A stretch of DNA of 64,000 nucleotides from Sphaerodactylus townsendi (GCF_021028975.2 NC_059430.1:90582001-90646000), one strand, 5' to 3'. Shown: positions 10,330-50,000, counted from the first letter of the stretch. The notes: generated by a model from the sequence alone, not told the origin. Numbers and translations: made by a program.

Positions 10330-10510
10330 TTTTCTGCAGCCAATTTGTGGCGACCCTATTTGGTTTTCAACCAGAGAGATTGACAAAGGAGGTTTACCAT
10401 CGCTTTCCTCTGCCCCTAGTGAGACTGCTATTCCTTTGTTGTCTCCCATCCAAACACTAACCAGATTCAACCCTGCTTCGCTTCCAAGATTTAATGACAC
10501 CCAACTAGTT
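10330..10510 (-). mobile_element. 5S rRNA-derived SINE (5S-Sauria-like)
   Basis: Minus strand reads atcttggaagcgaagcagggttgaatctggttagtgtttggatgggagac, a degenerate 5S rRNA internal control region, followed by a Sauria-like tail (gcagaggaaagcgatggtaaacc...gggtcgcca). Confidence 0.75.
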
Positions 10511-11357
10511 TCAGGACAGGGAGCAACCAACGCGCCAACAGACATAGAACCAATCAAGGCCGCTAATACTCTAATAAGCCCCGCCCCCTACTCCAGCACC
10601 TATCGTCTGAGTCGAAGGAGAAGAAGGGGCGGGGTAGGCCGGTTTGGGGTGGTGCTGATACGGCACCCAATCAAGGAGGTTCATTCATGTTTTCTCTTCA
10701 GAGCAAGACGACTTTTCATTCTTGCCCGTTTTCTGCACCGCCCAAAAGACTTCTCCTGTCCCACCAATTAAAGAAAAGCCACTCACTCCTCACAACGGCT
10801 TCTCCACTAGAACCGCACGCCGCGTCTCTTTTTCAAACTGTGGGTCGCAGTGGTTACACGGCAACCTAGCAACTGTTGGCGTCCTTTCCGCCGTCTCATT
10901 CTAAGCAATAGGAGCCAAGATGGGAGGTGGGCGCTGCGCTACGTAGCCAATCAAACAAGTGTTTTTGAGCCGGCGCTGGCGAAAGTAGCCAATCAGAAAT
11001 CTTTCGCGCACGCACGGACCTATTTACTGGCTATTTACCCAGCAGAAACAACGGAGCAAAGGACTACGAAAGAAAACTCGGGTCGCTTTCAGAGGCGCTG
11101 CTGCAATAAGAAAATTGCTGTTCTTTTTTATTATTAATAACAAATAATCATTAGCAGATTCTTCTGCATTTTCGCCGCGCGCGATGACGAAGCTCCTCCG
11201 ACCTGTTATCGCGCCCGCTAGGTTGACGTCAGGTAGAGAACTCGAGTGCGCTTTGGTGATTGGGCTGGACTCGGCCAATGGGTGGAAATCCGGAAGTAGC
11301 AAAGTGGAAGTGAGAGGCATGCAACCGTGGGAAGCGGTTTGATCGCCCAGCAGAGCC

Positions 11358-28900
<17,543 letters not shown>

Positions 28901-30815
28901 TGCACAAGAGGGGAAGTGCTGCATTGATTGGGGGGGGGGGGGGGTAGGAAGGGGTTGACTGTCAACTTGTTTCTGTTATTAGTAGAGAAGTCCTTTTGAA
29001 TCTCGTCACACTAGTGACCCATGCTTAATTTAAACTGGTACACTGAAGCTGTCTCGTTAACTGAACTTTTCTGTTTTTCTGCTGTGCATTCCAAGTTGCT
29101 CTTTGCTTTTACAATCAGTGTTGGAAAATTTAGCCAGTGCTGCATAATTCACTTGTCTTGTTTTATGTTTCCAAACTATAGGATAGCTACAGCAAAAGTC
29201 AATGTTAAGCAAATATGTAGTTGACAGTGCAATTTCACAGAATGACAGAAGAGTTGAAGTAACAGGTTTTACCTTTTATAAAATTATCTTTTTAAAAAAA
29301 TATATCTAGATGTTCAATGGTGGTTTCCCGCTGTTCCTACTGCAGCCCTCACAGGAGCCCAGTAATACTGAATAGTGGCAGCAGGTTGATTGTTATTCAA
29401 TGTGACCTGAGGCCATGTTCTCACATGGTCCACTCTTTTTCCTGGCTTTCACAGCTTGTATATTGTTGTACATTCTTTAAAACTGAATAGGTTACTGATG
29501 AAGGCAGAATCAAAACCTTTACAGTGCTGTCTGTCTTGCTTATAAATTCCAGGGGGTGAAGGGAGGCAGCACATCCTCCTAGGCTTTTACTGAATGCAGT
29601 ATTTAGAGGGGCTTATTATTTAGTCACACATGTGGCTGTAGGATTTAATCATATTCCACATGATTTGAAAATAGCCATAAAGGCTGATGAATAGCCACCC
29701 CCTTTCTGCTGGCTTAAAGGGCATGCAAGGAAACAAAGATGGATATGAGAGGAAGTAATAGAGAATTTTTACTTTATTGTCACTTAGTTGTAACACCAGT
29801 TCTAATAACACAACTCACATCCTTCGGTCAGCCTTTCTGAAGCTATGTCTTTAGCAGCCTGGCTTAATGTTGGCCTCCGGTTTCTCTTTCTGGTTTCCAG
29901 CAGGCCTCAGGCCACCAACACTGGTAATGTTTACAGTTCTAGGTTTGTATTCATTTCCCCTGAAGCAATTTGCAAAACTGCCAGAAATGTCATTATCATG
30001 TAATGATGTTGTAGAATGGTAATTACCAGCTGGAATGGAGAGAGAGAATGAGCTAGAATAGAAGAAAATGTTGCTGCTGCAGGTGAGGAATATTAGTTTA
30101 GCTGATGAAGGACATTACAGGATGGCTGCTTTTTCCAATCAACCTGCCTGTCTTCCTCCCACATGACTTGTGCTAGGAAAAACCTTTTTAATGGTTTGGC
30201 AGGAAACTACCCAGTGAGAGCTGGCTTTGAAATACAGCTGTTGGATTCAAGGAGGGACAGGGAGAACATTAAAAGGTTTTATGGAAAATCTAGTCTAAGG
30301 ACTACCCAATTTTCCTGTTCCTTCTTGAATCTGAACTTCATGGGAATTTATGCAGATACTACCTTTCAAAGTCAGGTGCCAGTGGTGAGTCACAATTGTG
30401 TACTTAATTCCTTGCAAATCCTTTTGTAGTTGCACAAGAATGGTATGAAGTTAGGAGCCACTGTCATGACAACCATCACCCCACCACAAAACAACAAAAA
30501 GATTTTTGGTACAAGAATCTCGGTGTGGCTGTGCTGGAGCTTGCCCCACACTTGGCAGACTTGGCAAGAAGTAGCTCAGAGAGAACTGAACAGGCTGCCA
30601 GTGAGGAAAGCAATCTGACTCTAAGCACAAAAAACTAGAACAGGCTGTTGTCCACCTGGGAGGAACAAAAGAGCTTGGAGTAGCCCACACCTGCAGCAAG
30701 GGCAGCAGGATAGATAATGGGGTGGTGACAGAATGGAGCCAGGAGTGAAAACGTGTATAGGTACCCTTAGGTTTTTCTGATACCACTAGGAAAAATATGC
30801 ACACTCAGCCTAGGC

Positions 30816-30882
30816 CCGTGGTGGCGAACCTTTGGCACTCCAGATGTTATGGACTACAATTCCCATCAGCCCCTGCCAGCGG
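30816..30882. mobile_element. One-armed hAT MITE remnant
   Basis: Left arm is similar to 37800-37947 (ctccagatgtt...actacaattcccatcagcccct); flanks GCCTAGGC / GCCTAGGA (7/8 TSD). Confidence 0.7.
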
Positions 30883-31406
30883 GCCTAGGAGAAAGTATAG
30901 ACACTGGAGAGTCTTCACCTGTGTAGCTTACCTAACCTGGGCAGGGGCAGACTGAAAGTTCAGCAGATCCCATGCCAAAGGCCAATGAGGCCTGAAGAGG
31001 GCACTCATAAGTCATATCAAGGATGAAGTAGTAAAAAATTCAAGTATTTTATTAATACTCCCTTATACAAGTGTTGATGCATGTTGCTAATGAAATAAAT
31101 CCATTTTGACAGTACCAGAAATAGCAAAATGTGCCTTAAGGATGTCCTACTCTTGGTTTTGCAAACTCTATGAAGTTGATTTATGTTCAAAAGTAGCCAC
31201 ATGAGGCTCATATCTGAATTGTCTTTCTGGTTCCTGGTACTGAATACTCATCTGCAATCAGTTGCTTCTTCAGAAGACAATTATTTGATCTTCCCATTGT
31301 CTAGATATTGTTTGTCAGTCCTTTTTAGTATTGTAAATGACAGCTTTCAATCAAAGGTCTTTTAGAACAGTTTCAATTGCGGGTAACAAAAAAAAATTCA
31401 AATAGA

Positions 31407-34400
31407 TTATGTTGCCACATCCATTGTGATACCTTCACATTTTCCAGTATGTTGATCTGTGCAGGTAACATGTAAGGATCCATCCCTAAATAAGAGAGAT
31501 GTTTATAATGTTAAAAAAATCTAATGCCTAGGAAATCCTGTTGTGTATGTATAAGAGTTTTGATTACACATCTGAGTGCCAAACTGGACAAGGAACATAT
31601 AAAGAGGACTCATACTTCAAAAATGAAGTTGTGATGTAGAAAACAGTACCCTTCCCCAAGCCACCTTGAAAGTTTTACTTAAGCATGCAAAGGTCCCGGA
31701 CAAATTGACTCCTAGTATGGTATCTGAAAGCTGCAAGGAAGCTTGTTTCTCCTGGTAACCAACTGAGAAACTGTAGCTTAGATCTAAAGTAGTATTTCTT
31801 GGGACAGAAAGACTTCTGCTTGCAAAGGGTGACTTTTTCCACACATACGCCTCCAATTCCAAATGCCACCTGAAATGCTGTTCCTTAGATCTCATCCCCC
31901 ACAATTTAGTGCTATAGAAGAAGCCAGAAGTAAAAAAAACCCCAGCCCTCCTTGGTTGGAGTCCTTAGCCCATAGCACTGGTGTTCTGGAGCCATGCCTA
32001 TGTATCTTTTGTATGTAAGTGAAAAAGGAAGGGTTCTAGTATAAAAGAAAACAACTATGTTCCATGTTTATATCAAATAGGGTGATTGTAAATTATATCT
32101 AGCAACTCCAGTGTCAATTGTAGAATTATGCAGAAAAGCACCAGCAGTTTTTCTCTACTTAATTAACATGTGTAGTATTCAATTCACCAAAGTTATTATT
32201 TCAAACAAGTACGAATAAAAAAATTCCAATTTCTGTAAAATATATGTTCGTATAAAGTTGTGTTACTGGATCACAGAATATTTTGGTTTCACAGTACCTT
32301 TTCATTGTAAGCACAGTTAGTATGTCATGCAAGCCTTCTTTCACATCTAAATCCTGGAGTACAATCTGTTCAAACAAGAAAGCCCCCTATATTTATATCT
32401 GTTTAATGTGTTTAGCAAAAAGAATATCACATACTATAGAAATGCATTGGCAATCAGATTCAGAATCACTTTGTTTTTATTCAGTTTGCTCTCCATTTTC
32501 ATGTGTGAAAATACACCCATATAAAATTCAGATGCCACAGAAGTCCACAGTGATTTTCAGGAAAAGAGTTTTTTTTAAAAAAAAAAAACTTGCCATGAAA
32601 GTCCATAATCTAGGGTTAGATGAATGCTCATTAGTTTCTACATTTATTACAGGGACAAAGATTGGTAAATGGGAAAAAATCAGTCAACATGACCAAACTT
32701 GTTCATTAAAGAGCCTCATTAAGAGACACTTCTCCTATACTTGTCTCACTCAAAGATAGAACCACAGTGTTGAATTAATTCACAGCCACTTCTGGACCTA
32801 CCTAAGGTGGTAGCCATCTTAGGGGACAAGGAAAAGACAGAATTGGAAGGTTTGGATTTGAAAAATTGATCGGTAGAGATGAAGGTAACCTCAAGTAGCA
32901 TGCAGTCAAAACTGCTGTGACAGAACAAAGGCATTCCAGAGATAGAGGTGTTTTTAACCCACAATGGCCATTTTGGAACAATTGGAGGGGGGGGCTAACA
33001 TTTCAAAACAACAATCAGTGGGGGAGAATCCTTAGGGGCAACTGAGCATAATGCAGTTGAAACCACTGTGACAACCCAAGGGATTCCAGAGATACAGGTG
33101 GTTTTATCCGTGGCAGCCATTTTAATATTGGGACTTTTTCTCTACAGCGGAAACACATTACTTCCACTTCCTCTGAACAAAGCAGAACCGCATTTTAATC
33201 TTTTGGTGGGACAAAGTATAGTGACATGGAAACCACTCTCACAGAGCATTGCCAATATGAAAACCGATTGTATGATGGTATCATGTCGCCAAAATCATAC
33301 TACACAGCTCTTTTTTGCCAGAATTAACCTCCATCCCATTTCTTGAGGGACAATACTAGCACAGAGAGGAGGTGAAGCATGAGTGTGTGTCCCCCCCCCC
33401 CCCCCCCCCCCCGTGGCCTGGGCACTTAAGAAGGAACTATGTATACTACAGTGGCTTCCAGGCCACTGAAAAAGATACAAAATATTTAAAAATACTTTTT
33501 TTTACTGTGAGTTGCCCTGTGAGCCCTAAAAGCCTGAGTATGGGGTTTGTTTTAAAAATAAACACCATTCAGCTTTTACATGTGGAAACTTTGATAAAGA
33601 TCACATGGTAACTACTGTTCACTTCAAAGCTGCCACCTTATTTTTCACAGTAGCAAAGCAATTATTTCACCAGTCATAATTTATTACATAAACCCTATTC
33701 AATACAATAGCTTATTCAATACATTTTGTGGAGCTTCTGCAAGAATGATGATTTTAACAGGGAAAAGGTTTTAATAGTCTGTTCAGTATGCAAATAAATA
33801 TACTTTCTACTGGTACTTGCTCACCTGTGCAAATTTGTCATCCTCTTTTATGGGACTTTTTTCCAAAGATTCGTAAAATTCTACAAAAATGGAGGAGTTG
33901 TTTCCTGGAGCTTGTAAAATATGTTGCCTTCGAGCTGGCAAAGGAGTTCCTGACGGCAATGCCACCACAAATTTATCAGTACCTGACTCATCAACTGTCT
34001 GCGAAAACAGAGATTTGTAGTCTCAGCACTTCAGACAGAAGGACACCAAATCTCAAGTCATTACTGTCTATTCCAGAACAAAGGAAAAGTAATACTTTTA
34101 CAATCAGCACAATGATCCTTCATAAAACAAAGATCAGATTGCAAATGCCTGAACAGATCCATACTAACTTAATACTACTAATTAAAAAAACATTAATCAG
34201 ATATTATGGTTCAGCTGAACCTCAGTTCAGGCATGGTTTTAAAAAAAAAAACTAATACACATCCTTGCCCAATACTCCAAAAGAAAGAAAAGTAGAAATT
34301 CTCAGGATATTTCATTATAGCAAGCAAAGCCAAGATCTTCACTTAAAAGGCCATAAAAAAATCTCAGGCTTACCTTGACCAAGATATCTTTGGTAGAACA

Positions 34401-37400
34401 TTCAACAGACAGTGTCTCACTGTCTAAGAAGAGATTCTCTCTTCCTAACAAGATCCCAGCTTCTATGGCAGCCCCAATGGGAATGACTTCATCTGGTGGT
34501 ATAGAATTCAGCAGTTCAACTGTGGGGAATAGGTCTTTGATCAACTGTTGTAATTTGGGAATACGAGCAGATCCACCACAGAGAACGATCTAAGGGATAA
34601 AGAAAAATTAACAGGACAATATCGAAGCTTTTAGACTTTCCTGCAAGTTTATATTGGAGCAGATTTTCGAACCGGGAAAAAAAAATCTTCCTGAAACACA
34701 ATACTAATCACATCTTTTATCCAAATCATCTTGGGAGAAGGTGGGAAGTATTCTAAGTGCTCTTTAATGAAGCTGCCAACAGATTCCATTGTGATGGGTG
34801 AAGCGCAGAAATGTGCCCTAGATACACTGCAACTAATAAGAACATTGTTTTGAATCAGTCAATAGGAGCTGTTGGCTGAGTTAACATCTGACAGGGAGCT
34901 TAAAGTAAAGTTCTCAAGGGTGGAGTGAGAAGAGTTAGTCTAACCGGAGCAGCAATTAAAGATCTAAGGGGATTTCAGAGATTTAGCTAAGTTGCCCTAC
35001 CTGAATGTACTGAAGCATTACAGGAGGCCAGCAGAGTTTTCCTGGGTTATACAACTTAGTTGCAGCAAAATGCTATGATGTTACAAAGCTACCTGAGTGT
35101 GTTTTCTTTAGGCATATATTTTGTAAAACCTAACCATCTCACGCTTCCCAGTTAAGTGTTGATATTTACCTTCGGCTGCAGGTTTGTTTTGGAAATAAAC
35201 TTTGGTTTTGTTCATAGTGTGCATCATTTGCCAATCAAAGCATGGATGGGTTTATACTCAGACCCAGATCCATCTTCCTTTGAATCTTCTTTTTAATTTC
35301 CTTTCAATAACACAGGTGCAATGGTGGTATGGCAGAAAACATATTGTTACAGAAAGGAAATTCCTGTGAGACAGTGGCTAGACCCCAGGAAATCTGTCAC
35401 AGTTTGGTGGCACTGAGAGTGGGAAGGTTTTAGTGAATTCTTGTCAAAGTTGACCATAGCATGATGCCTTAGAACACCCATGATGTCCTGACTTCTTTTT
35501 TTAAAAAGGCAAAATCAAATAGAGGAGCAAAAAAACTGAAATGATGCCCAAAAACTTGATTTTTAAAATCACTGGTTGTTCTTTAAAACCTGCCACATTT
35601 TGCTGGATAGATATGCTTTTTAAAAAACACACACACACAAAAAGGACACAATGCACTGTCCCCTTTTTATTCTGTTAAATAATCCTATTTAAGGGATTCC
35701 TCCCATTTTCTGGTGGACTAAAGGCTAGCAATCAAGATAACTGGATAGCTCAATGGCTTCCGAGTTCCTGGTCTGACTAGCCTCCCCAAAAGGGGCACCC
35801 GTAACACTGTGATATAAAATTTATTTTCTTTTTTAAGTTTAAAAAATAATTTTATTTCACACAAAATTAAAAATTTACATATATTACCACATACTTGTCG
35901 AACAAAATATACATTTTTGTTATTCCTCTATTGGGAATACTTCATTACAATTTTAAACTTTGTGGTCTTCAGTTGACTTCACCATCCGTTTTGCATAATT
36001 CCTATGCCTTGTTCTTAAACTGGAAACTTAAAATTTTTATGCTACGGCTAATTTTTATAATACAATATTACCAACACCAGTTTTACTACCTTAACTCTCG
36101 TTTAAATTAATACCAATAAATTTCTTAATCATTCAGTTTAAAATAAATCTTCTATCTAGCTTATATAATATTGTTAAATTCATATGATCCTTCTTTCTAT
36201 GACAGACTAAGCTTGAATTTACCCCCAAAAAAAGTTTGCAGAAGTTCCCAAATCTTCTCTTGTTTTTGATCACTCTCATTCTGTAATTTCTTTTTAACTG
36301 ACAGCATAAAGTGACAAGAGAAAGTCCCGAAGGAAATTTTTGCTTTTTGTAAGAAAACAACCCCCGAAATCAATTTACTTTTTCAAAAATTACCATAGGG
36401 GAGCCCAATATAGTGGGGTAGGTGGGAAATTATATTGAGATGGGAAGTTTTTTTGAATAAACACACATTCAAGGACTGCACATTTAGAAACCAATCCCCC
36501 CATTTCTGGATAACATTAGTTATAGATCACACCCCGAATATTGCCACAAACAGCTTGAAGCTCATCAAAAAAACAATGGATCAAAGGCTGTTACCCTTGA
36601 AGAGTTACTAGGGTTTAAAGATTACTAGTCTGCTTTGTTTATACATAACTGTATTTGCCATGTGTGGCATACTAATGACTTGGAAGAAAACACAAGCAAG
36701 AAGCATGTTCAGGTCATTTAAAAACAAAAATCTAATTACCCAGGAGAAAATCTCACTAAACAGAGCCGTTGAGCCAAGTGTCTACTTATAAGCTCACAGA
36801 ACTGCATAATCATTGGTCAATTAATCAGGACTACATTCTTCCTACTCACACTATATAAATGAGACAGTGTTCTTATAAAATTAAGTGAGAGGAACAATAG
36901 ACCCAGTCTACCAAGGATATGAGAGATTTGTCTCAGTTGGCACCTGGGCACCAGGCACCAACCACCTTGAGCATATTGAAGTTTTAAAGGTAAAGACAGT
37001 CACCTGTGCAAGCACCGAATCATTACTGACCCATGGGGTGACGTATCACAATGTTTACTAGGCAGGCTATTTTTGCACGAGGGGTTGCCACTGCTTCCCC
37101 AGCTGCTACACTATACCTTAATCAAGGTGGGAACTCATTTTACTGACCTTGGAAGAATAACAGGTTGAGTCAACCTTGAGCCAGCTACTTGAAACCAACT
37201 TCTGTCGGGATCAAACTCAAGTTGTGAGCAGAGCTTTGACTGCAGTACCACAGTTTACCGCTTTGCGACAGAGGGCTCCTATTCCAGTGTATTAGGAACA
37301 ACAACAACAAAAATCCAGGATTACCTTACTGATATCATCTGCTGCCAGCCCAACTTGGTCCAAGAGTTTTTTTATGGCGTCTATGCATTTGTTAAAGAGT

Positions 37401-40400
37401 GCAGAACAAATCAGTTCAAATCTGGCCCTGTTGTATATTTTAAAAAGATGAAGAAAAAGAAGGAAGACTTAAATACATTTTCTTCCTGAGGGAAAAGTTT
37501 ATCTGGGAGGTCAGCTGGACATCTGGTGTAGCTAATTCAGCACAAGATGAGACCTGAAATGCAGCATGAAGAGCAGGCTTAAAGAGCTCTGACCTTAGTA
37601 GCCAAACACAAGAACTATTTCTCTACACTGCAACACCATGCCACCTTAGCTGTTCCAAGTTTGTACGACCACATAAGGGGCTCTACTGTCCCTCTTGTAA
37701 ACATATCTTCCTGCGAGGCCAATTGCTTACACTGGTAATTAGCATACTGCAGAGCAAACAGAATACATGTTAGTCACTGTTTTGGCTATCACACTAGTGC
37801 AGGGGTAGGGAACCTGCGGCTCTCCAGATGTTCAGGAACTACAATTCCCATCAGCCCCTACCAGCATGGCCAATTGGCCATGCTGACAGAGGCTGATGGG
37901 AATTGTAGTTCCTGAACATCTGGAGAGCCGCAGGTTCCCTACCCCTGCACTAGTGTGTACACTAGATCACATGAACGGAAGTAGTTGTATGGATGTTTTG
38001 TATTAAAAAGAGAAAAACTGATGGCTTCAATCAGCACATGAACCAACTTTAAATCCAGGATCCATCACATTATATGTTCATTTCAATAAGACTTGAGTGG
38101 CCAGAAGATAGTTGCACTTAACTGTAGTTCAGAGTTTTCTTCTAGGCTGGAACACATCAGAACTGTGCAGGCCAGCTCTTTGGAAGATCCTTCCAACTCT
38201 AACTCTTTAAATAACTGTACCAGGGGTGAGGGGCTTCCCTTTAAAGTGCTCCAGATGCCATTTTCGCACATAAACAATGAAGTGTTTTGAGTGGGGCACC
38301 CTTTCCCTCAGTTCTCCTGAAATGCCACAAGCCCTAGGCTAACAGCTGATCAAGAAATACAGATCTAACTAACTGTGTGGCAGGAGGAAGGGAATGTGTG
38401 CCTGCACAGAACACAACCCAGTGAACAGCAATTACAGGTAACTGTTTTCATAATTGGTCTTCGGTGCAATCCCATGCTGGGAAGCTAACAAGCTACTACC
38501 CCCACAAAGGCACTGAAAAAGAGAATGCAAACTCACTTTGCCCATTGATCTCTCCCTTCTTGCACAGAGAGCAGTGCTTCACAAGTGTATCCAAAGATTA
38601 CTATGTCACTACCCTGGAAATATCAGCCAATGGAACACCTCACACAAATGTAGCCAATGAAGCCTGTTCCCTTGTGCAGTGTGCAAGGATCTGGAGGGAG
38701 CAGGGAAGTCCTGTAAGTTGTGGGGACAATCCTCTTGGATAAAATTTGTGAAGAAGCAGCCTTCCCTTTGGATGGGCCTGAATGAAAAATAAATCATTGT
38801 GGAACCCTTTGAAAGGATTCTGTCCTTTTAAGATAAAACAATAAGGGTCTCCTAATACTCGAGGTATGTAAAGTTTGTTCAGCGGTAGAGGTGGCAATCT
38901 GAAAAATACCAGACATGTGATACTTTGTGAAAAATAGAATCTAGAGACCACCTTGGGTAAAAATTGTAGACTATGTCTCAGATACCTTCCCATCATAAAA
39001 CTTGATGAAAGGAGGATTTGCTCTTAAGGTAGCTAGCTCACCCACCTTTTTCATTGATGTTATAGTCACTAGGAACAACTCTTGAGGGACAGTATGGACA
39101 GAGGGCAGAAAGTCAGTAGCTCAAAGGGAGCTAATGTAAAATTACTGATAGGGACCAGTGAGATACTATGGGGGTCCTTGGAGGATAAAGGTTGAGGAAT
39201 CCCTTCAGAAACAACTTGGAATAGAAAAGGGAAAACAGTGTTCTGTCCTCTACAAGGGAATGTGATGTAAATATTGCAGCCATATTGCGCTTTAAATGAC
39301 GAAAGGGCTGAATTCAATGACTATAAAGAAAAGAAACATTCAAATACCAATGGAAAAGGGCAGGTTGTGCAGAAACTTATTAGCCCAGGTAGAAAACATC
39401 CCAATTTTTGAATATACTAAAGTCTTTTCATCAGCCTGTAAGCATTAAGAAATCTAAAAGCAAAGGATGAGAAACCAAGTTGTTAAACAGCTTCTTTTTG
39501 ATGACACACAACCCTTCTGAATAGTAAATCTGGGATCCGAGGAAGTTGTATATTCCTGCCCCATCTAAGTTGCTGAATAATCAGTTAGAAAAGGCCTTTT
39601 CCCAGAGGATAGCTTTTAAGTGTGAGGCATGGTCAATTCAGGACTTAGGGGTGAACAGGTGGGAGTGTTTGAATTCTGCCACATGGTACAACTCACCAAA
39701 ACATGATAAATATTAATCTATCCTCACTATTTTTTAAAGTAATGCCTTCAGGGTCATGAAGAAGGGCAAAGAAAAAGATTGACAAATAATGGCTCAGCAA
39801 CAGAGAAAGAAGAATTCAGAGATGAAAACTCAATCTTCATGTTGGGGTAGCAAAGAATGAACTGAGGAAAGGGGGCACCTCCTCTAAGAGCATCTGGAAC
39901 CCCTCCCCCTGATAGAGCCTGAAAGATCTTCTGCACAGCTAGCCTGCACAGCTTCAATGTGGGACTGCCCCAAAGACCAATAAACATTAGAAAGACAACT
40001 GCAAGACTGAACATAAGCAATCGGATTCAAATTTGTAAAACCAATGAATAATTTGATTAAATGGTAGCATACTACATACTCACTAGAAACAAAAGTTTAG
40101 AATAGTTTTTTCCTCAAGGAACAGTTACCCTTACCTGGAAACATTACAGTCAAAATCTATTCCATCATAGAGAGAGTCAACAAAGCAGTTTGCACTTCCC
40201 AGCGTTGACAGCGCATGCTTTGCCACTTCAGCACTGTTCATCAGCTTCATCATGGCCCTCGAGTTCCCTCTCACATCATACTTATAAGACCTAAGTTTTC
40301 AAAAAAGTAATTACCAACTGCAGATAAAAAATACACTCAGCAATATATTAGTAATCATTAGCCTCATTGATCAGTTAAACATCCAAAGGTAGGTACAGCA

Positions 40401-43400
40401 GAACCTGACTGCAAATCCTTTTGCTGGAATGTGACTCTAATTATGCATTATAACAGTGCATAATGTACACATAATGGAGTGAACAGTAAGACATTTCAGC
40501 CTTACAAAGAAGTTTCACGGGAGTTACTAGCCTGTCTGCTCACTCTTGATTATGAAAGGAGGCTTGAATGAAAGAAATTTTTTTGAGAAGCTTCCCCTCC
40601 TGGTTGCCCAAAGGCCATTCTTACATGCCATAGGCCAGTGGCTGTTTACAAGTCTGTAACTTTCTCTAGTCAATCAAATAGGGTACACTGCACTTGCAAC
40701 AGCCAGTATTTGAATACAGTCAAATTTAAAAACTGATCTTCAATGAAACTCACTAGGTGACATCGTACAGGCACTCTCCTGACAGTTCTAAAAGAGAAAT
40801 CGTTTCAGACTTTGGTTCAGTTCCATGTTATCTTAAAGCCAGGAGAACTTACCTTTGAAATTCGGAAGCCAGATGCTGGGCTACGGCTTCCGTGAAACAG
40901 ATTCCACCTATGCTATCATCTGTGTTAGTAGAGAGAACGTGGTACAGTCCACTGTTGACTTCTATAACAGTGATAGAGAGGGATGCTCCTCCAAGTTTGT
41001 AAACTAACACGTTGCTTCAACAGCAAAAATTAAAAAGCAAGATTAATGAGGTTAATGAGACATGAGTATTATACTACAGCCCTTTATCATAACAATAAAC
41101 CCTTTAAAACACTTATAACAAGTTTGGTTAAGGCTGAGGTTTCAGTTACCTGCCACTACCACTTAGCTTTGAATCCCAAGTTTAAAAATTCAGTAACGTA
41201 AATTTTGTAATTAGAACTGTAATCTTCTTACTGCCATTTGAACCAATCAGCATTTAATAAACTGATACCAACATATATTCTACCCATGTTCATAATGAGT
41301 TCTGAGCATCGCATTTCCACAGATCAATTCTCTGCGTACAGCAGCAGGAGGGGGTGGGATGCCACAATTCTACTGAATACAGCAAGGGTGATCTGTGAGC
41401 CAGGTTTCAAACACATTGATGTAAGACTATTGGGTAACAGGGTGCAATGTTTAAAGCCATGGGTTCTGAAGCTGGACCCCAACTGGAACAATTTCAATGG
41501 CCAAACCAGACTACAACAGTATCTGAACCTTAGATATACCATGTTTCCCCGAAAATAAGACAAGGACTTATTGGGGCTTATCTTCAGGGGATGTCTTATT
41601 TTTTCCCATGATTTTGCGCAACCCACAAGACCAGATCAGATGCACCAGGGAATATGTAACTAGGGCTTATTTTCGGGGTAGGTCTTATTTTCAGGCAAAC
41701 AGGGTAGTTGGGTTCTGCTGAAGCCAAGGGTGGGTGGTACATTCTGAAGTGGCAAAGTTGTGAATTCTAAGGTTTTTATTCCAATGAGGCTTGAAGAACT
41801 AGGGCCCCTTCCGCACACACAAAATAATGCGTTTTCAAACCACTTTCACAACTGTTTGCAAGTGGATTTTGCTATTCCACACAGCTTCAAAGAGCACTGA
41901 AAGCAGTTTGAAAGTGCATTATTCTGCATGTGCGGAATGAGCCTAGGATAATACTACAGGAGCACAAGCATCCATTATCTTAACCAACCATAATTCCATT
42001 TTTCCTCTTTGCTACATTTAATTTTTCTCATTTCTCACTGTGAAAATTAAATGAAACTACTCTAAGCCTTTCATATAATTCAAAGCATTTTAAAAATATA
42101 GTATGTATCAAATAGTAATGCTATTTGTTTGAGAACTATAAATCATTACCTTTTTCCATTGGGTGAGTCTTGCCCAATTCCATATGCCAAAAGAGCGGCA
42201 GATGGTTCATGGATTAGCCTTAGAACATTCAGCCCAGCTGACACAGCAGCTTCTCTGCGACAGATACAATGGTCAAGAGATTGGCATTTAATTTCCAGCT
42301 ATTGTCTTGTCTCAATACAGAACAGAAAAATGCTCTGTCATGAATGGGTAGAACTGAACCCAAACAAACCTGCCTCAACGAACTTATACACCAGTTCAAG
42401 GCATGCTTAAATAGCCATAGGTGTAAAACAAATGAACTGAAACTAGATAAAGCATAAAATCACCATAAAGACAGATATGGAAGCAAAAGCTACTGACCCA
42501 CTCTAAGCAACCTAGTGTATATAATGTTTGAGAGTTGGGATTCAGAATCTAAATCTCCCATGCCCAAAGCCAATGTCTCTTATAGCTAAAATTCCTGCAG
42601 ACACATTTAATCCATACACCCCCACAAAGGACATTCTTACCCAAGAACATTCTTCTGTTTCTCTCCAAAATCAAAAGGCACCGTAATAACTGTGTCATTG
42701 ACATCAGCACCCAAAGCAGACTGAGCTGTTTCTACATATTAAAAACAAACCCACAGTGTTATAAGAGCAAAGCCATCGTTTCAAATGAGGAAGTGTCAAA
42801 TGTGGAATGTTAGTTTTTTACCTTTCATTTTCCTGAAGATCAGTTTTGCAACTTCCTCAGGAGAAACAAGTTTGCCATCTATTTCATAATGAAGTTTACC
42901 AGTCTTTTCAATGACCTACAAATGAGGACAAACCAAAGACAATTCTCAAAGGGCCCACAAAAAGATCTGTTAAAAACGGCCGCATATGTTTATTCATGTC
43001 TCTGCACAATTCACAAATGAAGCGGGAGGTAGATCCTCCACATTCAGAGGCATGACTGGGGAAGGTCTCAGCCTCTACCGCCTGTTGTTGGCCTTCCAGA
43101 ATAACTGGGTGGCCACTGTGAGAAACTGGATGCTGGACTAAATGGACCACTTGGCTGATCCAGCAGGCCTCTTTCTTATCTTCTTAGATAATGCAGAAAA
43201 GAAGATAATGCAGAGAGCTTTTGCTCAACTACTGCCCCATGCTCCTTTTCATGTCAGAAATTATTCTCCAACTATGAATACCTCACAAGATCAACAAGAT
43301 ATTCTGAAGTAGCAGCAGCAGGTATTTGGGACAAGCAACCTAACACAGTGATCGCCCAACTATAAAGTTCTTCCTCCACTGACTCTTGACAATTCCTGTT

Positions 43401-46326
43401 TTTGGGAAAGAAGCTTAAGTTCCAGTTTTCTGTGAGGCTTTCTAGATATTAAATGGGCACTTTGGGGAGTTATTATCAGTATTACTTTATTGATGCATTT
43501 GTTTTAATGATTTTACCCTGAATTGTGCTTTGTGTATTTGCCTGTATTTTGTATTTGCCAAAACAGCCTTCATGCACATATGCAAGGAAGGAACATATGC
43601 AAGAAAGGAACACAGCCTTCATGCACATATGCAAGCTTACTATGAACACCCTGCAGTATGGGGTTAATCCTCCCACTTCCTCCAGTTTCCCCCTATACTA
43701 GCTGAACTATGTTCAGAAAAATTCCTCTCACTTCAAAGGCTATTCTGCAAGTAGCCTTACTGGCTCAGAGCAGGCAGGCAGAAGTAACCCATTTCAGCAG
43801 GAAACCTTTAATCGCCAATGGATAACTGACATTTACTAAAACAAGCCACAGAACCTTCCAAAAGCAAGGGCAAATAAATGCTTCTTAGCCCACAAGTATC
43901 TGAAACAAGTCTTGTAATTGTGAAAAAATGAGTTCTGATGCTGTGTATAGGATGCCAAAAGCACAAATGAACTTATCCTATTCATGGGGGGAAAGTATAA
44001 AATAGACTAATCATTTCTTTTATTTTCTTACCGAACATTTACTTTCCGCAATGTACTTCTGAGCTTGCAACTCACCAGGGCTGTCAAAAGAAGAGAATGG
44101 AAAAGACTGCTCAAAAGGGATCACATAATATTTTGTGCTCGCATTCTTATTTCATATGAATCACCCCGCACAAAGTCTTAGTTCTGCTAAGGTCCAAATT
44201 CAAAGCCTTATTTATACATTAAGGTACAGGACCTACTTCTGGACTTTGCTTCTTACTTGTGAAAAACAGAAAAAAAAAGAACCAAACCAAAGCAAATCCC
44301 ATTTCAGACAATCATGTTGACCTCCTCTGGTCCCATTTAGCTCTCTCATTTAAACAACAGCTGCTTAATGACTGTGCTGCATGGGAAAATATTTTACTCA
44401 GACTTATTTCCACATCTTATCACACTGGAAAGAACAGCTCATTTTTTATTCAGCATCTTCAAACCTACAGAAAACCCCCAGAGGAAGTTCACTGTGGCTT
44501 CACTGACCTTCTCCCAAGAATTTGCTTCACTTTCACTACAGTGTTCGAAAGATTTCTTACTCTGTTTTGTTTAGCTGCCAACCCAACAACCTGCAAGAGC
44601 AAAATAATATAATCAAAAAACAAACATACTACAATCTTCTTCCTCATGTTCCATTAAGGAAAGGAAAATTACCTCTTCATTTTCTGAATACGCAACCACA
44701 GCAGGAGTAACTCTGTCACCTGCATCGTTGGCAACAACATCTGCACGACCATCCTGAAGAAATATACAACCAGTTTATTATCAGTATCAATCACAAAGGA
44801 AAGAAACATAATCTTATTTATTACAGCCTGCATGCCCCTTTTAACATTTTTTGCACTGGGTCAGGTCTTGGCTGCCAACCGAGGGCATGTTCTATTTCTA
44901 GACTGGGCGAAGACAAAATCATATGTTTCTAATTTACATTAAAAACACTTACAGCCCAATCCAGATTGGAGAAGAGGGCAGAAGGGGCTGTGGGAATAGT
45001 GCAGGTTCCGTGCATTTTTACAAAACAGATAATTAAATCTCCAATAGTCAATGAGAGGCCTTGCTCAAAGCAAAGATGGAGACATACAGTATCTCTACTA
45101 ACAGTAATAGCCAGTACTCTAATTTACATATTATCTCCATATATATCCCAGATATTTTAGAGTCTTAATCAAAGTACCATTAGCAATATTTTTGTCCCTT
45201 TTGCTTTCATTTTGGCAGTCTCATGTTAATAAAAATTACATATATGAGCCATTATTACATATGGTTATTTAATATTTATATAAAAGGTCTGTAAAAATGT
45301 GCACGTAACAATACAAATATGTGTGTAATGTTTGTTCCTGTCTTGTGGCTCTCAAACATCTGAATACATGTAATTATTTGTATGCGATTATTCTATGTGG
45401 CTCTTACGTTAAGCAACTTTGGGCACCCCTGGTGTAAACTGAAGTTTCATACTCTGTAACCCTTGCAGCCCACCCAATAAACTTTAACCACTGTGTTTTT
45501 CAATTGTGTCTGGGAGGGTCATTCCTCATGGGGGGCCAAGAGGGAACCTTAAAGGCAAGATACCACCGATGTGCGATGCAATCCACACAGTGGATAACTT
45601 TCTGCCTCTGTGTGCCATTGCTCCTTCTGCATGGACAGACCTAGGGGTGCCATTCATTCTGTCACTGGGGCTGGGCTGCTGTGTAGGGGGCTGGGGGCAC
45701 CCATATCAAGAATGGGTGACTCTGTGTGAACAGCCTCCATGGTTCCTGGGAGAAACTGTGCAGAGTGGTGGTGGTGGAGTTGCGAGGGAGGAACAGACAG
45801 AGAGGAAAAGCTTCCACTCTTTTTCTGCAATGGGAAGCTTGGCTCGACATTTCAAGGGTCTCCAGGATCTTCAATTCCATTTTGGTAAGCTAACGAGAGC
45901 TCAGAGTGAGAAAAAAACATGGATTTTGGCACAGGGGACTTCTCCAAATCATTAGTTGTCGATTTACAGTGAGAATGTCGCTACTTAGAAGCAGGGAAAG
46001 ACACTGGACTGCAAACTTTTCTCCTAACAGACTATCCTTCCGCTCCCAGGAAGTTGAACATATAAGAGACCCAAAAACCACGTGTTTTATTATCCCTAAC
46101 GCGCCAACTTTCTACTTGCAGGTAGCACCGTACGCAACAGGCCAAGACCACTTCCTCTATGCAAGACATAGGACTGTGCATCCCAGCAGCTACATTATGT
46201 CCTCATCCACTCCATATATAGCCCAACCGCAATGTTAATATTTCCCTGCTCCGCTGTCGCCAAACTCACCTTATAAACGGCGACGCAGGCGCAGGTGCTC
46301 CCCAGGTGGACGCCGATGGCCGCCAT
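31407..46326 (-). CDS. HSPA14: Heat shock 70 kDa protein 14 (ribosome-associated complex Hsp70L1), 14 exons: 46270-46326, 44673-44753, 44508-44590, 44032-44080, 42822-42915, 42641-42731, 42150-42254, 40853-41014, 40135-40290, 37325-37427, 34374-34589, 33825-33998, 32298-32365, 31407-31485; 505 aa
   Basis: Peptides [19 protein letters not shown] / [22 protein letters not shown] / [17 protein letters not shown] / [22 protein letters not shown] / [12 protein letters not shown] / [21 protein letters not shown] introns, 1518 nt in frame. Confidence 0.97.
34790..35425 (+). mobile_element. Putative 5' LTR (34790-35401) followed by a PBS-like sequence
   Basis: TGTGA...TCACA inverted termini, internal AATAAA near 35194, immediately followed by gtt-TGGTGGCA. 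Confidence 0.5.
36986..37280 (-). mobile_element. Sauria SINE
   Basis: (ACCTTT)-type tail (aaaggtaaag on +) and the conserved body actcattttactgaccttggaagaataacaggttgagtcaaccttgagcc. Confidence 0.8.
37800..37947. mobile_element. 148-bp palindromic hAT MITE
   Basis: Almost perfect 74-bp inverted arms starting CAGGGGTAGGGAACC; perfect 8-bp TSD CACTAGTG. Confidence 0.92.
38350..40020 (-). mobile_element. Decayed DIRS-type tyrosine-recombinase retrotransposon
   Basis: Minus-strand peptides [33 protein letters not shown] (HxxR box) and [21 protein letters not shown] resemble the DIRS YR C-terminus; boundaries approximate. Confidence 0.75.
41539..41704. mobile_element. Tc1/mariner (Tc2-like) MITE, 166 bp
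   Basis: TIR CCATGTTTCCCCGAAAATAAGAC / GTCTTATTTTCAGGCAAACAGGG; TA TSD; same terminal type as 21799-22038. Confidence 0.8.
41803..41943 (-). mobile_element. 141-bp Harbinger-like MITE (family A)
   Basis: Reverse complement of 3722-3862; TSD TAG. Confidence 0.85.
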
Positions 46327-47070
46327 GACACCTCAACTTCCTCAAGGGCTACGCCATGCTGTCTCCCTTCCACCCAATGGCCTAAGAACTCAGCAACGGC
46401 CAATCAACAGCGACTTCATTCGACCAATCAAAAGAGAGCAAGACGTAGCGTCATAAAGTGTATTAACCAAGGTAGGCTGGGAAGAGGGCAGGGTTTTAAG
46501 GGGCGGTTGGGTTGGCTCGGGGGCGTTTCGGAAGGGGGCGCGGCCCGAATTTGATCCCAGTTAGGGGCGGGGCTTCGGCTGACGGCCACGAGCGGCACCG
46601 GTATTTGTGGAGGCTTCTGCGCTGCAAATTATGGTGCAAATTTGGCGCGCGTGGCGCTGCTCCTGGGTCGCCCTGGCGCTGGCCGCGATGAACCTGGCGG
46701 GCTGCTTCCTCCAGAGGGCCGGGGGTGCGGAAGCCCAGTGTGAAGGTGAGGGGCCCGCTTGTATCCCTGCACCTGTTGCTCCTCGCGGGACCATCTGCGG
46801 CTATAATTAGCCAGGCGCATGTTATTCACAAGGGCCCCGCTCTCTTACACAGCACCCTTTTAGCTCGAGCCTTCGTCGTTCTCCGGCGAGAGCTCCCCGG
46901 TCCTGCAAAGGGGGGTGGGGGTTCTACTAACAATTTCTGCGTGAGTTTTGGCAAGTTAGGCGGGGCTGGCTCCCTCCCTCCCTTCAGCTGGGCTTTTCTG
47001 TGCAATGACTGTAGCAAGAAACTGACTCGCACGTGGATGTGCAAAATGCAACGAGGAGGAGAAAGTCGCT
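46230..47070. promoter_or_regulatory. CpG-rich bidirectional promoter HSPA14/CDNF
   Basis: Start codons at 46326 (-) and 46631 (+) are 304 bp apart; three CCAAT boxes near 46374, 46400 and 46424; GC boxes near 46500 and 46563; high CpG density. Confidence 0.85.
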
Positions 47071-50000
47071 AGAGATGTTTCTCCCTCTCCCATAGCACTG
47101 GAGTTGTGGGGCACCGAGTGAAGGTGACAGGGCAGAAAATATTTCTTTGCTCAACGGGGAGCTAAATTGTGGGAATCACTGCCAGGGGGCGTAGCGACCG
47201 CCCACTATCATAAATGATTTTAAAAGGCAGAAATGATTTTATATGGCAGAATCCCCCTGCCCTAGATAGGCCAGGTTAACTGGATCTTGTCAGAACTCAG
47301 AAGCTATGCAGGGTCCGCCCTGGTTAGTATTTGGATGGGAGACAACAAGGAATACCATCTATTCCTTGAAAAACCTCTGGCATCCCCATAAATTGGCTGT
47401 GACTTAACAGCATTTTCTACCGTCCATAACAGAAACAAAATAATTTGAATTTCAATACAGCTACAACATAAAACAACTACCAATTATTAATTGTGGTTAC
47501 GCAGAATGTTCCTGAGCATACCCATTCAGAGCGTTGAAAGAGTTTTTGGGTTGCTCATTTGTTTCAAGGCACAATTCAAAGTGCAGGATCTTACCTTCAA
47601 AGCCCTAAATGGTTTGGGGCCAGATTACATGAAGGACCAGCTCCTCCCATATTGTCGATCCTTCCAATTAGAATCTGCCTCTCAAGCTCTGCTCTCTGTT
47701 CCCGCACATAAAGAGGAGAAATGAGTGGCTGGCCACCAGAACCAAGGCTTTTTTAGTAGCAGCATCTTGCTTGTGGAATGCCCTTCTCTATGAGGTTTGC
47801 TTGCCAACTATATTGCTTTCTTTTAGGTGCTGGGTCATAATGTTCCTGTTCTCCCCGGCTTTTAACTTAGGGATTCTTATAACACTATTATAGTCTGCTT
47901 TTAGTGTGAAAACTGTTATTCTAAGCTGTTCAACAATCTATGCTTTTAGATTGTGGCTGGGTTTGTAAAGCTGACTGTTAATGCTGGATTTTAATTAATT
48001 TTTCATGTTTTGTTTGTATTATGCTTTATTTTGTAAGCTGCCTCCGACAGATTTCCTGGAAAGGCAACATAACAATTTGCTGAATAAATAACAAATAAAT
48101 AAAATCCTACGGTGTTCAGTGGGTCTTACTACTAGCTAATGAGTGATCGTAACCAGTGTCTAGAATTTACTAAGAATGTTGGATCTTGAATGTTGACTGA
48201 AATACTCTCTTATTGCCTATAGATGGCATAAGAATATCACAGAATCACCTTCTGTCATCCTTTGTATAAACTGTTAATTTATTGATTAAAACTTCATATT
48301 CTTCCTTTCCTTGTGGTTCAACGTGGCTTTGTGAAAAATGTAGTAGGCTTTTCAGCAACACTTATTTTCACATTCAGTGTTGGCCCCGGTGAAATTATGT
48401 AGTCCTTTAAAAATAAATAGCGTTGGGAAAACCTGTGCTTTCATTCACAAAGTCTCTTTGTCTGCTGTGGCAAAATCAAGGATTAACACATTTAAATGAT
48501 CATCAGCTAGCACCCATGCTGTCAAGTGTGTAAAGGATACCCACATAGTATTGTATTGTCCACTCAGACTGGCAGCAGCTCTCTAAGGTATCAGGCAGAG
48601 GTCTTAATGTCAAATTCCTTAAAACAGGAGAAGCTGAGGATAGAACCCAGGACCTTCTACATGCCATGCAGATGCTCTGCCGTTGTGCCACAGCCCCCCG
48701 CCCCCCGTGAAAATGATGACAGTGAAGATGATGGCTAGAAAATGATGACAGTGAAGATGATGGCTATGGGGCACATGGGAAAGTGTAGGGAGACTGATAG
48801 ATCATGTTTGTAAAATGGGATTAAAAGGTGAACAGGCTTACATCATACTTGAATCTGTCAGAGTTCATCTTCTAAGGGTCAACAAGCCAACAGATATAAA
48901 TAATTCCACGCATGGCCAACTTTAGCTGCTTGGTGTTAAATTTTCATGATGTGGAAGGGACTTAATTGCATTTATAAGAACAGTTCCAACCAAAGTCTCT
49001 ATTCAAGCCAGAACTAATGGATATAGTATGGAAATAAGTTATATAAGCCTGAAAATCTTTATATAGTTTTACATTGTCAAATACTGGGGTAATTCAGGAT
49101 TCCATTAAGGGAAGCTGCATTGCTTTACAAAAAAAGTATTCACAAAGCTTGGCTTCCAGAGCTACAAAACAAAGCAATCTCATTAGCTTAATAAAAATAA
49201 ATCTTCAGTGCTGTTGCCCAAAACTGACTTCCAGAATGAACCAGAACCAATCACAGTTTTCCAGCTGATGACCCAATCCGGGGGGAAGGTGCAAAAATGG
49301 CATCTGGGATTGGTTCAGCACTGCACTGGTGTGTTTGCCCCCTCTGCTGGCATAAAAGGCACCCACGTTGGCGGAGAGAGCAAAGACCCCGGTATCTAGG
49401 CGCCTCACAGCTCCGCAGCAGCCAAACATAGAAGTGGGTGCCATGGCGGAACTACACTGGCATCCAAACAGTAAATTCTCAGGGTGGAGCCAAATTTAGT
49501 CAGCTTCCACCAGGGCTTTCAATCCAGGAATACCTCAGCATGAGCTTTGGGTTTACACCACCCGCTTCGTTCAGCCCTATGGACGGCTTTTCAGGCAGCT
49601 GTGTTTTTTCTTTTTTACTACCTCCCCACACTGCCTGGAAGTCCTCTGGAGGTGATGATGCAGTGGCACCATCCCCAGTTGCTGGAGCCCCATGGATTGG
49701 GCTGCCATTGTACAGACTACATTTGAACAAATACTGAGGAAAATCCAATAGAACTGTTGAAAGGATATCTGATATTCCCACATACTCCTTTGAACTTTTT
49801 CAATGTTCTACATAAGCATGTTTCATTAACTAAGAATGCAAAAATAATCCCTTACAGGAAATAGAACCTTTGCAGACTGAAATATGTCACATCACATAAT
49901 TATCAAAGTGAAACTGATCGAGAGCAGCACTTTTGAAAAGCAAGTTATTTTGTGTCCATCTTACCCATTACAGAAGTAACAGGTTGTTAGTATCAACAAG

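What the first reader, a model, noticed from the sequence alone, without database searches (positions are those of the whole stretch)
28901..31406. SUV39H2 is missing from the CDNF-HSPA14-[SUV39H2]-DCLRE1C-MEIG1 block
Established: in human the H3K9 methyltransferase SUV39H2 lies between HSPA14 and DCLRE1C, on the HSPA14 strand. Seen: the order and orientation of the other four genes match that block, but only 2506 gap-free bp separate the DCLRE1C and HSPA14 stop codons. I found no CpG island and no chromodomain, pre-SET, SET or post-SET peptide on either strand. Inference: a clean deletion or relocation of a testis-enriched heterochromatin writer in this lineage. If truly lost, SUV39H1 or other H3K9 methyltransferases must cover its role.
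Basis: partly seen in the sequence, partly recalled or inferred. Interest (0 to 1): 0.8.

Follow-up and report, generated by a model that had tools for sequence, protein, structure and literature searches.

The report
SUV39H2 gene missing in a gecko
In this gecko genome the histone methyltransferase gene SUV39H2 really is absent from its usual place between HSPA14 and DCLRE1C, but this loss is shared by lizards and snakes generally and was published in 2026.

Summary
The window comes from the gecko Sphaerodactylus townsendi. DCLRE1C (+) ends with a stop at 28898-28900. The HSP70-family gene taken as HSPA14 (-) ends with a stop at 31407-31409. The 2,506 bases between them contain no N and no CpG island. 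They also hold no chromo, pre-SET or SET peptide in any frame. Full-length SUV39H2 from tuatara, turtle, pigeon and frog finds nothing in the 64 kb, while the same queries find the exons in bird loci.

It is not an assembly collapse. Independent short-read contigs tile the interval, and one contig from a related species spans it.

Three other squamates have the same MEIG1-DCLRE1C-HSPA14 order, with spacers of 1.75-3.1 kb: leopard gecko, alligator lizard and a boa. Pigeon has SUV39H2 in a 15-kb interval, and a sea turtle and two other birds also carry it there.

Two protein word searches found SUV39H2 in tuatara, turtles, birds, mammals, amphibians and sharks, but in no squamate. All squamate hits group with SUV39H1 in a tree.

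I could not search the whole S. townsendi genome or any RNA data.

The parts
6072..6419 (-). Open frame holding a MEIG1 coding exon
   Evidence: Pfam Meiosis_expr, E 4e-15. It is conserved with the MEIG1-side genes of Eublepharis, Elgaria and Candoia.
10501..11750 (.). CpG island between divergent MEIG1 and DCLRE1C
   Evidence: GC 0.53-0.56 and CpG o/e 0.77-1.07. DCLRE1C exon 1 starts at 11358.
11358..28900 (+). DCLRE1C (Artemis) coding region in 13 mapped blocks, with stop TGA at 28898-28900
   Evidence: tblastn of P0001 (NCBI 'protein artemis isoform X2 [Sphaerodactylus townsendi]'): most blocks match at 100% identity, including the last exon. Some mid-gene blocks match less well (down to 50%), as expected for isoform X2.
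28901..31406 (.). Whole spacer between the two convergent stop codons, where SUV39H2 lies in outgroups
   Evidence: No N, CpG o/e 0.10. No SET, Pre-SET or Chromo match. No tblastn hit with full-length SUV39H2 or SUV39H1; the best in the whole window is E 0.29. No Rfam family. It is colinear with the Eublepharis spacer in 7 blocks of 70-83% identity.
28930..28944 (+). Run of 15 G just after the DCLRE1C stop
   Evidence: Short-read contigs of two samples break here (table 8).
30807..30883 (.). Fragment of a very abundant squamate SINE-like repeat
   Evidence: Word depth is about 10^7 in all runs. It is absent (75 bases skipped) from the spanning contig of the related species (tables 2, 5, 8).
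31048..31099 (.). Candidate poly(A) signals of both convergent genes: AATAAA on the - strand at 31048 and on the + strand at 31094
   Evidence: Pattern scan only; use not tested. If both are used, most of the spacer is 3' UTR and the two transcripts would overlap slightly.
31407..42298 (-). 3' part of the HSP70-family gene taken as HSPA14 (stop on the complement of 31407-31409). Exons were mapped up to 42298; the 5' exons towards the CpG island were not mapped.
   Evidence: Pfam HSP70 on three exon frames. The exons are conserved and colinear with the 506-aa HSP70 gene next to DCLRE1C in three squamates. They are also colinear with the 513-aa HSP70 gene just upstream of SUV39H2 in pigeon, at 64-85% identity. 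They are only distantly like solved HSP70s. The name HSPA14 rests on synteny and length.
46001..47250 (.). CpG island between divergent HSPA14 and CDNF
   Evidence: GC up to 0.63, CpG o/e 0.65-0.86.
51588..54284 (+). Open frames holding three CDNF coding exons, taken as exons 2-4
   Evidence: Pfam ARMET_N (E 1e-8 and 1e-22) and ARMET_C (E 1.5e-25).

Best explanation
The window is the MEIG1-DCLRE1C-HSPA14-CDNF block of the gecko Sphaerodactylus townsendi. In birds and turtles SUV39H2 sits between HSPA14 and DCLRE1C on the HSPA14 strand; by the literature the same holds in tuatara and mammals. In the ancestor of lizards and snakes the segment carrying SUV39H2 was removed, by one or several deletions. 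This brought the 3' ends of DCLRE1C and HSPA14 to within 2-3 kb of each other. The gecko inherited this state. What remains is probably mostly the two convergent 3' UTRs plus a little repeat DNA. Squamates keep the paralog SUV39H1, which presumably carries the pericentric H3K9 trimethylation alone. Shown: absence at the locus, contiguity, sharing among squamates, presence in outgroups, and squamate proteins being SUV39H1 only. Inferred: a single stem-lineage event, the deletion mechanism, and compensation by SUV39H1.
For: Species: the last DCLRE1C exon is 100% identical to S. townsendi Artemis. Absence: no N and no CpG island; no SET, Pre-SET or Chromo match in six frames; full-length tuatara, turtle, pigeon and Xenopus SUV39H2 give nothing better than E 0.29 in the 64 kb or E 0.5 in three other squamate loci, yet hit bird exons at E 1e-8 to 1e-27. 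Contiguity: contigs of two samples tile 28001-32400, and one 5,634-bp contig of a related species spans it colinearly. Sharing: Eublepharis, Elgaria and Candoia have MEIG1(-) DCLRE1C(+) HSP70(-) with stop-to-stop spacers of 1,752, 3,081 and 2,005 bp. The two gecko spacers are colinear. Outgroups: a sea turtle and three birds have a Chromo/Pre-SET/SET gene next to DCLRE1C. In pigeon the HSPA14 stop to DCLRE1C stop distance is about 15.05 kb. Genome-wide proxy: the SUV39H2 group in two word searches contains tuatara, turtles, birds, mammals, amphibians, coelacanth, lungfish and cartilaginous fishes but no squamate; squamates first appear at 56-57% identity as SUV39H1. In the tree the SUV39H2 clade (100/99) has no squamate, and the 10 squamate proteins form one clade (100/99) sister to tuatara SUV39H1 (95/87). 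SUV39H1 is present in the geckos Eublepharis and Gekko kuhli. Literature: SUV39H2 is listed as lost in squamates with conserved synteny, segmental deletion and a retained paralog, based on 261 genomes (PMC13005343).
Against: I could not search the rest of the S. townsendi genome, its raw reads or any transcriptome. The genome-wide absence rests on annotated proteomes and on the paper. In S. townsendi's own runs no unique short-read contig bridges the SINE at 30836-30854; only the related species' contig, which lacks the SINE piece there, and the gap-free assembly do. Outside geckos the spacers are not alignable except for a short piece near the HSPA14 end, so a shared breakpoint, and hence a single event, is inferred by parsimony only. 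I did not see the tuatara locus itself. SUV39H1 of S. townsendi itself was not listed.
Confidence: 0.9

Rival explanations
1. Relocation: an intact SUV39H2 ortholog lies elsewhere in the S. townsendi genome and only the syntenic slot is empty.
For: The whole genome was not searchable here. The paper notes BLASTn coverage of 75% or more for SUV39H2 queries in squamate genomes.
Against: The paper assigns those hits to the paralog by phylogeny. No squamate protein falls in the SUV39H2 group, although RefSeq squamate proteomes are in the collection, including that of S. townsendi. All squamate hits are SUV39H1 in the tree.
Confidence: 0.03
2. Assembly collapse or mis-join: sequence carrying SUV39H2 was dropped between 28.9 and 31.4 kb.
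For: Short-read contigs of the same species break at the poly-G (about 28935) and at the SINE (30807-30880).
Against: No N in the window. Contigs overlap across the poly-G. A single contig of a related species runs from the DCLRE1C last exon to the HSPA14 last exons with only small indels (record 17). Three independently assembled squamates have the same compact spacer.
Confidence: 0.01
3. Several independent losses: geckos and other squamates each lost SUV39H2 separately rather than once in the stem lineage.
For: Spacers of the geckos versus Elgaria or Candoia share no alignable junction, only about 38 bases next to the HSPA14 end. Spacer lengths differ, from 1.75 to 3.1 kb.
Against: Gekkota, Anguimorpha and Serpentes all lack the gene in the same slot. 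The paper reports absence in all examined squamates. One loss is far more parsimonious, and lack of alignment is expected after more than 150 million years of neutral change.
Confidence: 0.04
4. No single clean deletion: SUV39H2 first became a pseudogene and then eroded by many small deletions until nothing recognisable was left.
For: Nothing in the data separates this from one event. The paper also says that deletion boundaries cannot be delineated, because the nearest outgroup diverged about 250 million years ago.
Against: The interval shrank from 15 kb or more (pigeon; larger in turtle) to 1.75-3.1 kb in every squamate seen, and neither flanking gene's 3' end was damaged. That is more simply explained by one or a few large deletions. 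No exon remnant survives in any of four squamates.
Confidence: 0.2

Closest known systems
Squamate-wide loss of SUV39H2 reported in 'Chromosomal rearrangements and segmental deletions contribute to gene loss in squamates' (BMC Biol 2026;24:72; PMC13005343; preprint 10.1101/2025.07.03.663111)
   Same: It concerns the same gene, and its class fits what is seen here: conserved synteny, evidence of segmental deletion, limited sequence divergence and retained paralog SUV39H1. It proposes the same compensation by SUV39H1.
   Different: The main text does not name Sphaerodactylus or the flanking genes, and its supplements were not available here. These are refinements, not a new result.
Other squamate gene losses by segmental deletion with a retained paralog in the same paper (KDM3A, CAV3, ADAP2, TBC1D14; also RBBP7 among chromatin genes)
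   Same: Flanking genes are kept in order, the intergenic distance is shrunken, and nothing is left of the gene.
   Different: They are different loci and functions. I examined none of them here.
Mammalian SUV39H1/SUV39H2 redundancy (from my own knowledge, not tested or looked up here: in mouse, single knockouts are viable, while the double knockout loses pericentric H3K9me3 and male meiosis fails)
   Same: It gives the rationale that one paralog can carry the function.
   Different: This is experimental redundancy in mouse, not a natural loss. Nothing about squamate chromatin was tested here.

Membership tests
Squamate SUV39H2 loss with conserved synteny (PMC13005343) | Flanking genes keep the ancestral order and orientation | tested here: met
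   MEIG1(-), DCLRE1C(+), HSP70-family HSPA14(-) and CDNF(+) in the window. Pigeon has HSPA14(+), SUV39H2(+), DCLRE1C(-).
Squamate SUV39H2 loss with conserved synteny (PMC13005343) | No SUV39H2 coding remnant in the slot | tested here: met
   Pfam scan of six frames at E<=10. tblastn with bird exons and four full-length SUV39H2 proteins gives a best E of 0.2-0.3, with a positive control at 1e-8 to 1e-27.
Squamate SUV39H2 loss with conserved synteny (PMC13005343) | The interval is contiguous and not an assembly artefact | tested here: met
   No N. Contigs of two samples tile it, and a single contig of a related species spans it. There was no long-read check.
Squamate SUV39H2 loss with conserved synteny (PMC13005343) | Intergenic distance reduced relative to outgroups | tested here: met
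   1,752-3,081 bp stop to stop in four squamates, against about 15,050 bp in pigeon and more in the sea turtle.
Squamate SUV39H2 loss with conserved synteny (PMC13005343) | Shared across squamate lineages | tested here: met
   Eublepharis (Gekkota), Elgaria (Anguimorpha) and Candoia (Serpentes) have the same arrangement.
Squamate SUV39H2 loss with conserved synteny (PMC13005343) | Outgroups including tuatara retain the gene | tested here: met
   Shown at the locus in a sea turtle and three birds. Tuatara has a SUV39H2-clade protein, P0298, but its genomic position could not be fetched.
Squamate SUV39H2 loss with conserved synteny (PMC13005343) | No SUV39H2 ortholog elsewhere in the genome | tested here: inconclusive
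   No squamate protein in the SUV39H2 group, and all squamate hits are SUV39H1. The S. townsendi assembly and reads themselves could not be searched. The paper reports this for 261 genomes.
Squamate SUV39H2 loss with conserved synteny (PMC13005343) | Paralog SUV39H1 retained | tested here: met
   SUV39H1 is present in many squamates, including the geckos Eublepharis macularius and Gekko kuhli. S. townsendi's own SUV39H1 was not among the members listed.
SUV39-type histone methyltransferase gene (chromo + pre-SET + SET + post-SET) anywhere in this window | Any of the four domains encoded in the 64 kb | tested here: not met
   tblastn of SUV39H2 and SUV39H1 proteins against the whole window gives nothing better than E 0.29. 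The Pfam scan of the spacer was negative.

The most novel reading that the evidence does not exclude
The stem-squamate loss of the germline-enriched H3K9 methyltransferase SUV39H2 left SUV39H1 as the only SUV39 enzyme. This changed pericentric heterochromatin and repeat silencing in the germline, and so contributed to squamate peculiarities such as diverse and active transposons and frequent karyotype and sex-chromosome turnover. Nothing here tests this. It is only not excluded.
Probability: 0.07. Interest if true: 0.6.

Novelty: already known. Interest (0 to 1): 0.2.

Why it matters
SUV39H2 is one of the two enzymes that lay down H3K9me3 at pericentric heterochromatin. In mammals it is enriched in testis (my own knowledge). 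Its natural absence from more than 11,000 species is a ready-made experiment on how far SUV39H1 alone can sustain heterochromatin and meiosis. That point has already been made in print. This window only adds a clean, gap-free example from a gecko, an early-branching squamate lineage, and shows that the interval has shrunk to little more than two convergent 3' UTRs.

Tried and rejected
- The look-up of encoding contigs on isoform proteins P0001 and P0020 and on tuatara Artemis P0042 found nothing on record. The tuatara locus was therefore not seen.
- The 10-kb flank of the sea turtle locus L001 held no canonical SUV39H2 exon. Its minus-strand frames hit the window only at 25.4-27.2 kb, inside a DCLRE1C intron. 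I read these as shared LINE debris: the bird-turtle hits carry CR1-like motifs, and the window hits themselves were not classified. They are not SUV39H2. Pfam on its ten largest frames was empty.
- The hummingbird locus L004 reached only the last two SUV39H2 exons.
- blastn of the four squamate spacers against the pigeon and turtle SUV39H2 loci found only multi-copy repeat pieces.
- Rfam on 28500-31900 gave nothing meaningful.
- Earlier scan notes gave nothing beyond this same finding.
- The paper's supplements are not held.
- No RNA run was listed, so 3' UTR ends and expression could not be tested.
- The large representative search served only to obtain a SUV39H2 protein id to seed the word searches.
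- HSPA14, MEIG1 and CDNF were searched exon by exon, by reference.

Full report
**What is there**

The window has no N. The long open frame 27647-28897 (+) is 100% identical to NCBI 'protein artemis isoform X2 [Sphaerodactylus townsendi]', and the next best hits are other geckos at 63-73%. The window is therefore from this gecko.

That protein maps onto 13 blocks from 11358 to 28897, followed by TGA at 28898-28900. On the other strand, the frame ending ...GITMDVAT is followed by TAA on the complement of 31407-31409.

Exon-by-exon Pfam scans gave these identities:
- Meiosis_expr (MEIG1) at 6072-6419 (-).
- HSP70 on three minus-strand exon frames between 34.3 and 41.0 kb.
- ARMET_N and ARMET_C (CDNF) at 51.6-54.3 kb (+).

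The HSP70 exons are colinear with the 506-aa HSP70 gene next to DCLRE1C in three other squamates. They are also colinear with the 513-aa HSP70 gene just upstream of SUV39H2 in pigeon, at 64-85% identity. They resemble solved HSP70s only distantly. I call this gene HSPA14 on synteny and length.

CpG-island-like stretches lie only at 10.5-11.75 kb and 46.0-47.25 kb, where the two divergent gene pairs meet. The spacer has CpG observed/expected of 0.10.

**Is SUV39H2 really not there?**

- All 74 stop-to-stop pieces of 25 aa or more from six frames of 28701-31606 were scanned against Pfam at E<=10. None matched SET, Pre-SET or Chromo.
- The last three SUV39H2 exons of a gull (L003), recognised by sequence and by a Pfam SET match, found nothing in the window or in the leopard gecko locus.
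- Full-length SUV39H2 of tuatara, snapping turtle, pigeon and Xenopus, and SUV39H1 of tuatara and bearded dragon, gave nothing better than E 0.29 in the 64 kb. In three other squamate loci the best was E 0.5.
- The same search hit the exons present in two bird loci at E 1e-8 to 1e-27.
- Rfam found nothing in the spacer.

**Is it an assembly artefact?**

Four public runs were laid on 28001-32400. In two samples of the same organism, short-read contigs cover the whole stretch. They break only at a run of 15 G (28930-28944) and at a SINE-like fragment (30807-30883) whose word depth is about 10^7.

In a related species, about 4% diverged, one 5,634-bp contig runs from the DCLRE1C last exon to beyond the HSPA14 last exon. 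It is colinear, has small indels only, and lacks just the 75-base SINE piece.

One weakness remains. In the gecko's own runs no unique contig bridges 30836-30854. Only the related species and the gap-free assembly cover that point.

**Other species**

Loci were fetched through Artemis or SUV39H2 proteins.

| Species (locus) | Arrangement | Stop-to-stop distance |
|---|---|---|
| Eublepharis macularius (L002) | MEIG1(-) DCLRE1C(+) HSP70(-) | 1,752 bp |
| Candoia aspera (L006) | MEIG1(-) DCLRE1C(+) HSP70(-) | 2,005 bp |
| Sphaerodactylus townsendi (window) | MEIG1(-) DCLRE1C(+) HSP70(-) | 2,506 bp |
| Elgaria multicarinata (L005) | MEIG1(-) DCLRE1C(+) HSP70(-) | 3,081 bp |
| Pigeon (L007) | HSPA14(+) SUV39H2(+, 8 kb of CDS span) DCLRE1C(-) | about 15.05 kb |

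The two gecko spacers align colinearly in seven blocks of 70-83% identity. Geckos against Elgaria or Candoia share only a short piece next to the HSPA14 end.

A sea turtle, a gull and a hummingbird have a Chromo/Pre-SET/SET gene tail to tail with DCLRE1C. The turtle interval is larger than the pigeon one.

No squamate spacer shows homology to the pigeon or turtle SUV39H2 loci, apart from multi-copy repeat pieces.

**Loss or relocation?**

I could not search the rest of this genome. As a proxy I obtained SUV39H2 protein ids from a search seeded with a bird SET exon. I then ran two word searches of the 5.8-billion-protein collection.

With tuatara SUV39H2 as query the hits fall into two groups.
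- **SUV39H2 group** (E<=7e-160, 61-83% identity): tuatara, turtles, birds, mammals, monotreme, marsupial, amphibians, coelacanth, lungfish and cartilaginous fishes, but no squamate.
- **SUV39H1 group**: squamates first appear at E 2e-146 and 56-57% identity, all named SUV39H1, level with tuatara's own SUV39H1.

A maximum-likelihood tree of 34 proteins has a SUV39H2 clade (100/99) without squamates. The ten squamate proteins form one clade (100/99) sister to tuatara SUV39H1 (95/87). The tree used only proteins listed in the best 120 hits, and no gecko protein was among its rows.

A cluster look-up shows SUV39H1 in the geckos Eublepharis and Gekko kuhli and in many lizards. S. townsendi's own SUV39H1 was not among the listed members.

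**Literature**

A full-text search found one relevant paper, BMC Biol 2026;24:72 (PMC13005343; preprint 10.1101/2025.07.03.663111). Its points on SUV39H2 are these:
- SUV39H2 is among 53 genes not retrievable in squamates.
- The paper proposes compensation by SUV39H1.
- It explains the high BLASTn coverage in squamate genomes by paralog hits.
- It used 261 squamate assemblies, short and long reads, and transcriptomes.

Its supplements are not held here. The main text names neither Sphaerodactylus nor the flanking genes.

**Mechanism and confidence**

The best reading (0.9) is an inherited stem-squamate deletion of the SUV39H2 segment. The remaining spacer is probably mostly two convergent 3' UTRs. 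Candidate AATAAA signals lie at 31094 on the plus strand and at 31048 on the minus strand, but their use was not tested.

The rivals rank as follows:
- Relocation: 0.03.
- Assembly collapse: 0.01.
- Independent losses in different squamate lineages: 0.04.
- One deletion versus pseudogene erosion cannot be resolved. I give gradual erosion 0.2, as a variant of the same loss.

**Verdict**

Interest is low. The session adds only base-pair detail and spacer sizes.

Noticed in passing
window 28898-28927: The DCLRE1C stop of S. townsendi looks like a recent nonsense change. The related species has C instead of T at 28898 (CGA instead of TGA). Reading through gives 9 more residues, ...RCTRGEVLH, then TGA at 28925-28927. 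That resembles the C-terminal ...ARGEALH or ...AAGESLH of Gekko, Paroedura, Lacerta and Candoia Artemis. Heteronotia also ends at ...LCS.
   Followed up: partly
window 30807-30883: A 75-base SINE-like fragment is present here but absent from the orthologous contig of a related species, so there is a lineage-specific insertion or deletion inside the spacer. The same core occurs as an inverted pair at 37838-37909.
   Followed up: partly
window 25446-27221 (+), inside the DCLRE1C intron before the last exon: Frames resembling turtle minus-strand frames (up to 54% identity over 92 aa, E 1e-15). I took them for LINE debris, because CR1-type motifs were seen in the bird-turtle comparison. They were not classified further.
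   Followed up: partly
L001 38921 / L008 20279-32879 (Caretta caretta locus): The deposited 453-aa SUV39H2 model of the sea turtle ends only 82 bases from the DCLRE1C stop. The canonical last exon (post-SET) lies 12.5 kb further in, at L008 20279-20383. The extra 3' exon looks like an annotation artefact or an unusual isoform.
   Followed up: partly
hit lists: No ray-finned fish appears in the SUV39H2 group; bichir, tarpon, eels and many teleosts show only SUV39H1, SUV39H1-A or SUV39H1b. Cartilaginous fishes, coelacanth and lungfish do have SUV39H2. This suggests a second, independent absence in actinopterygians. It was judged from names and scores only.
   Followed up: no
P0405 (Ammospiza maritima): A deposited 'SUV39H2 isoform' carries Pfam Meiosis_expr together with Pre-SET and SET. 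This is probably a chimeric gene model joining MEIG1 and SUV39H2 across DCLRE1C.
   Followed up: no
window 31048-31099: Poly(A) signal motifs of the two convergent genes sit within 50 bases of each other on opposite strands. If both are used, the DCLRE1C and HSPA14 transcripts would overlap at their 3' ends, which could be a side effect of losing the gene that used to separate them.
   Followed up: no
window 51300-51500 (+): A tandem simple repeat in a CDNF intron reads as repeated 'FIHS' in one frame. I saw it only in the frame listing.
   Followed up: no
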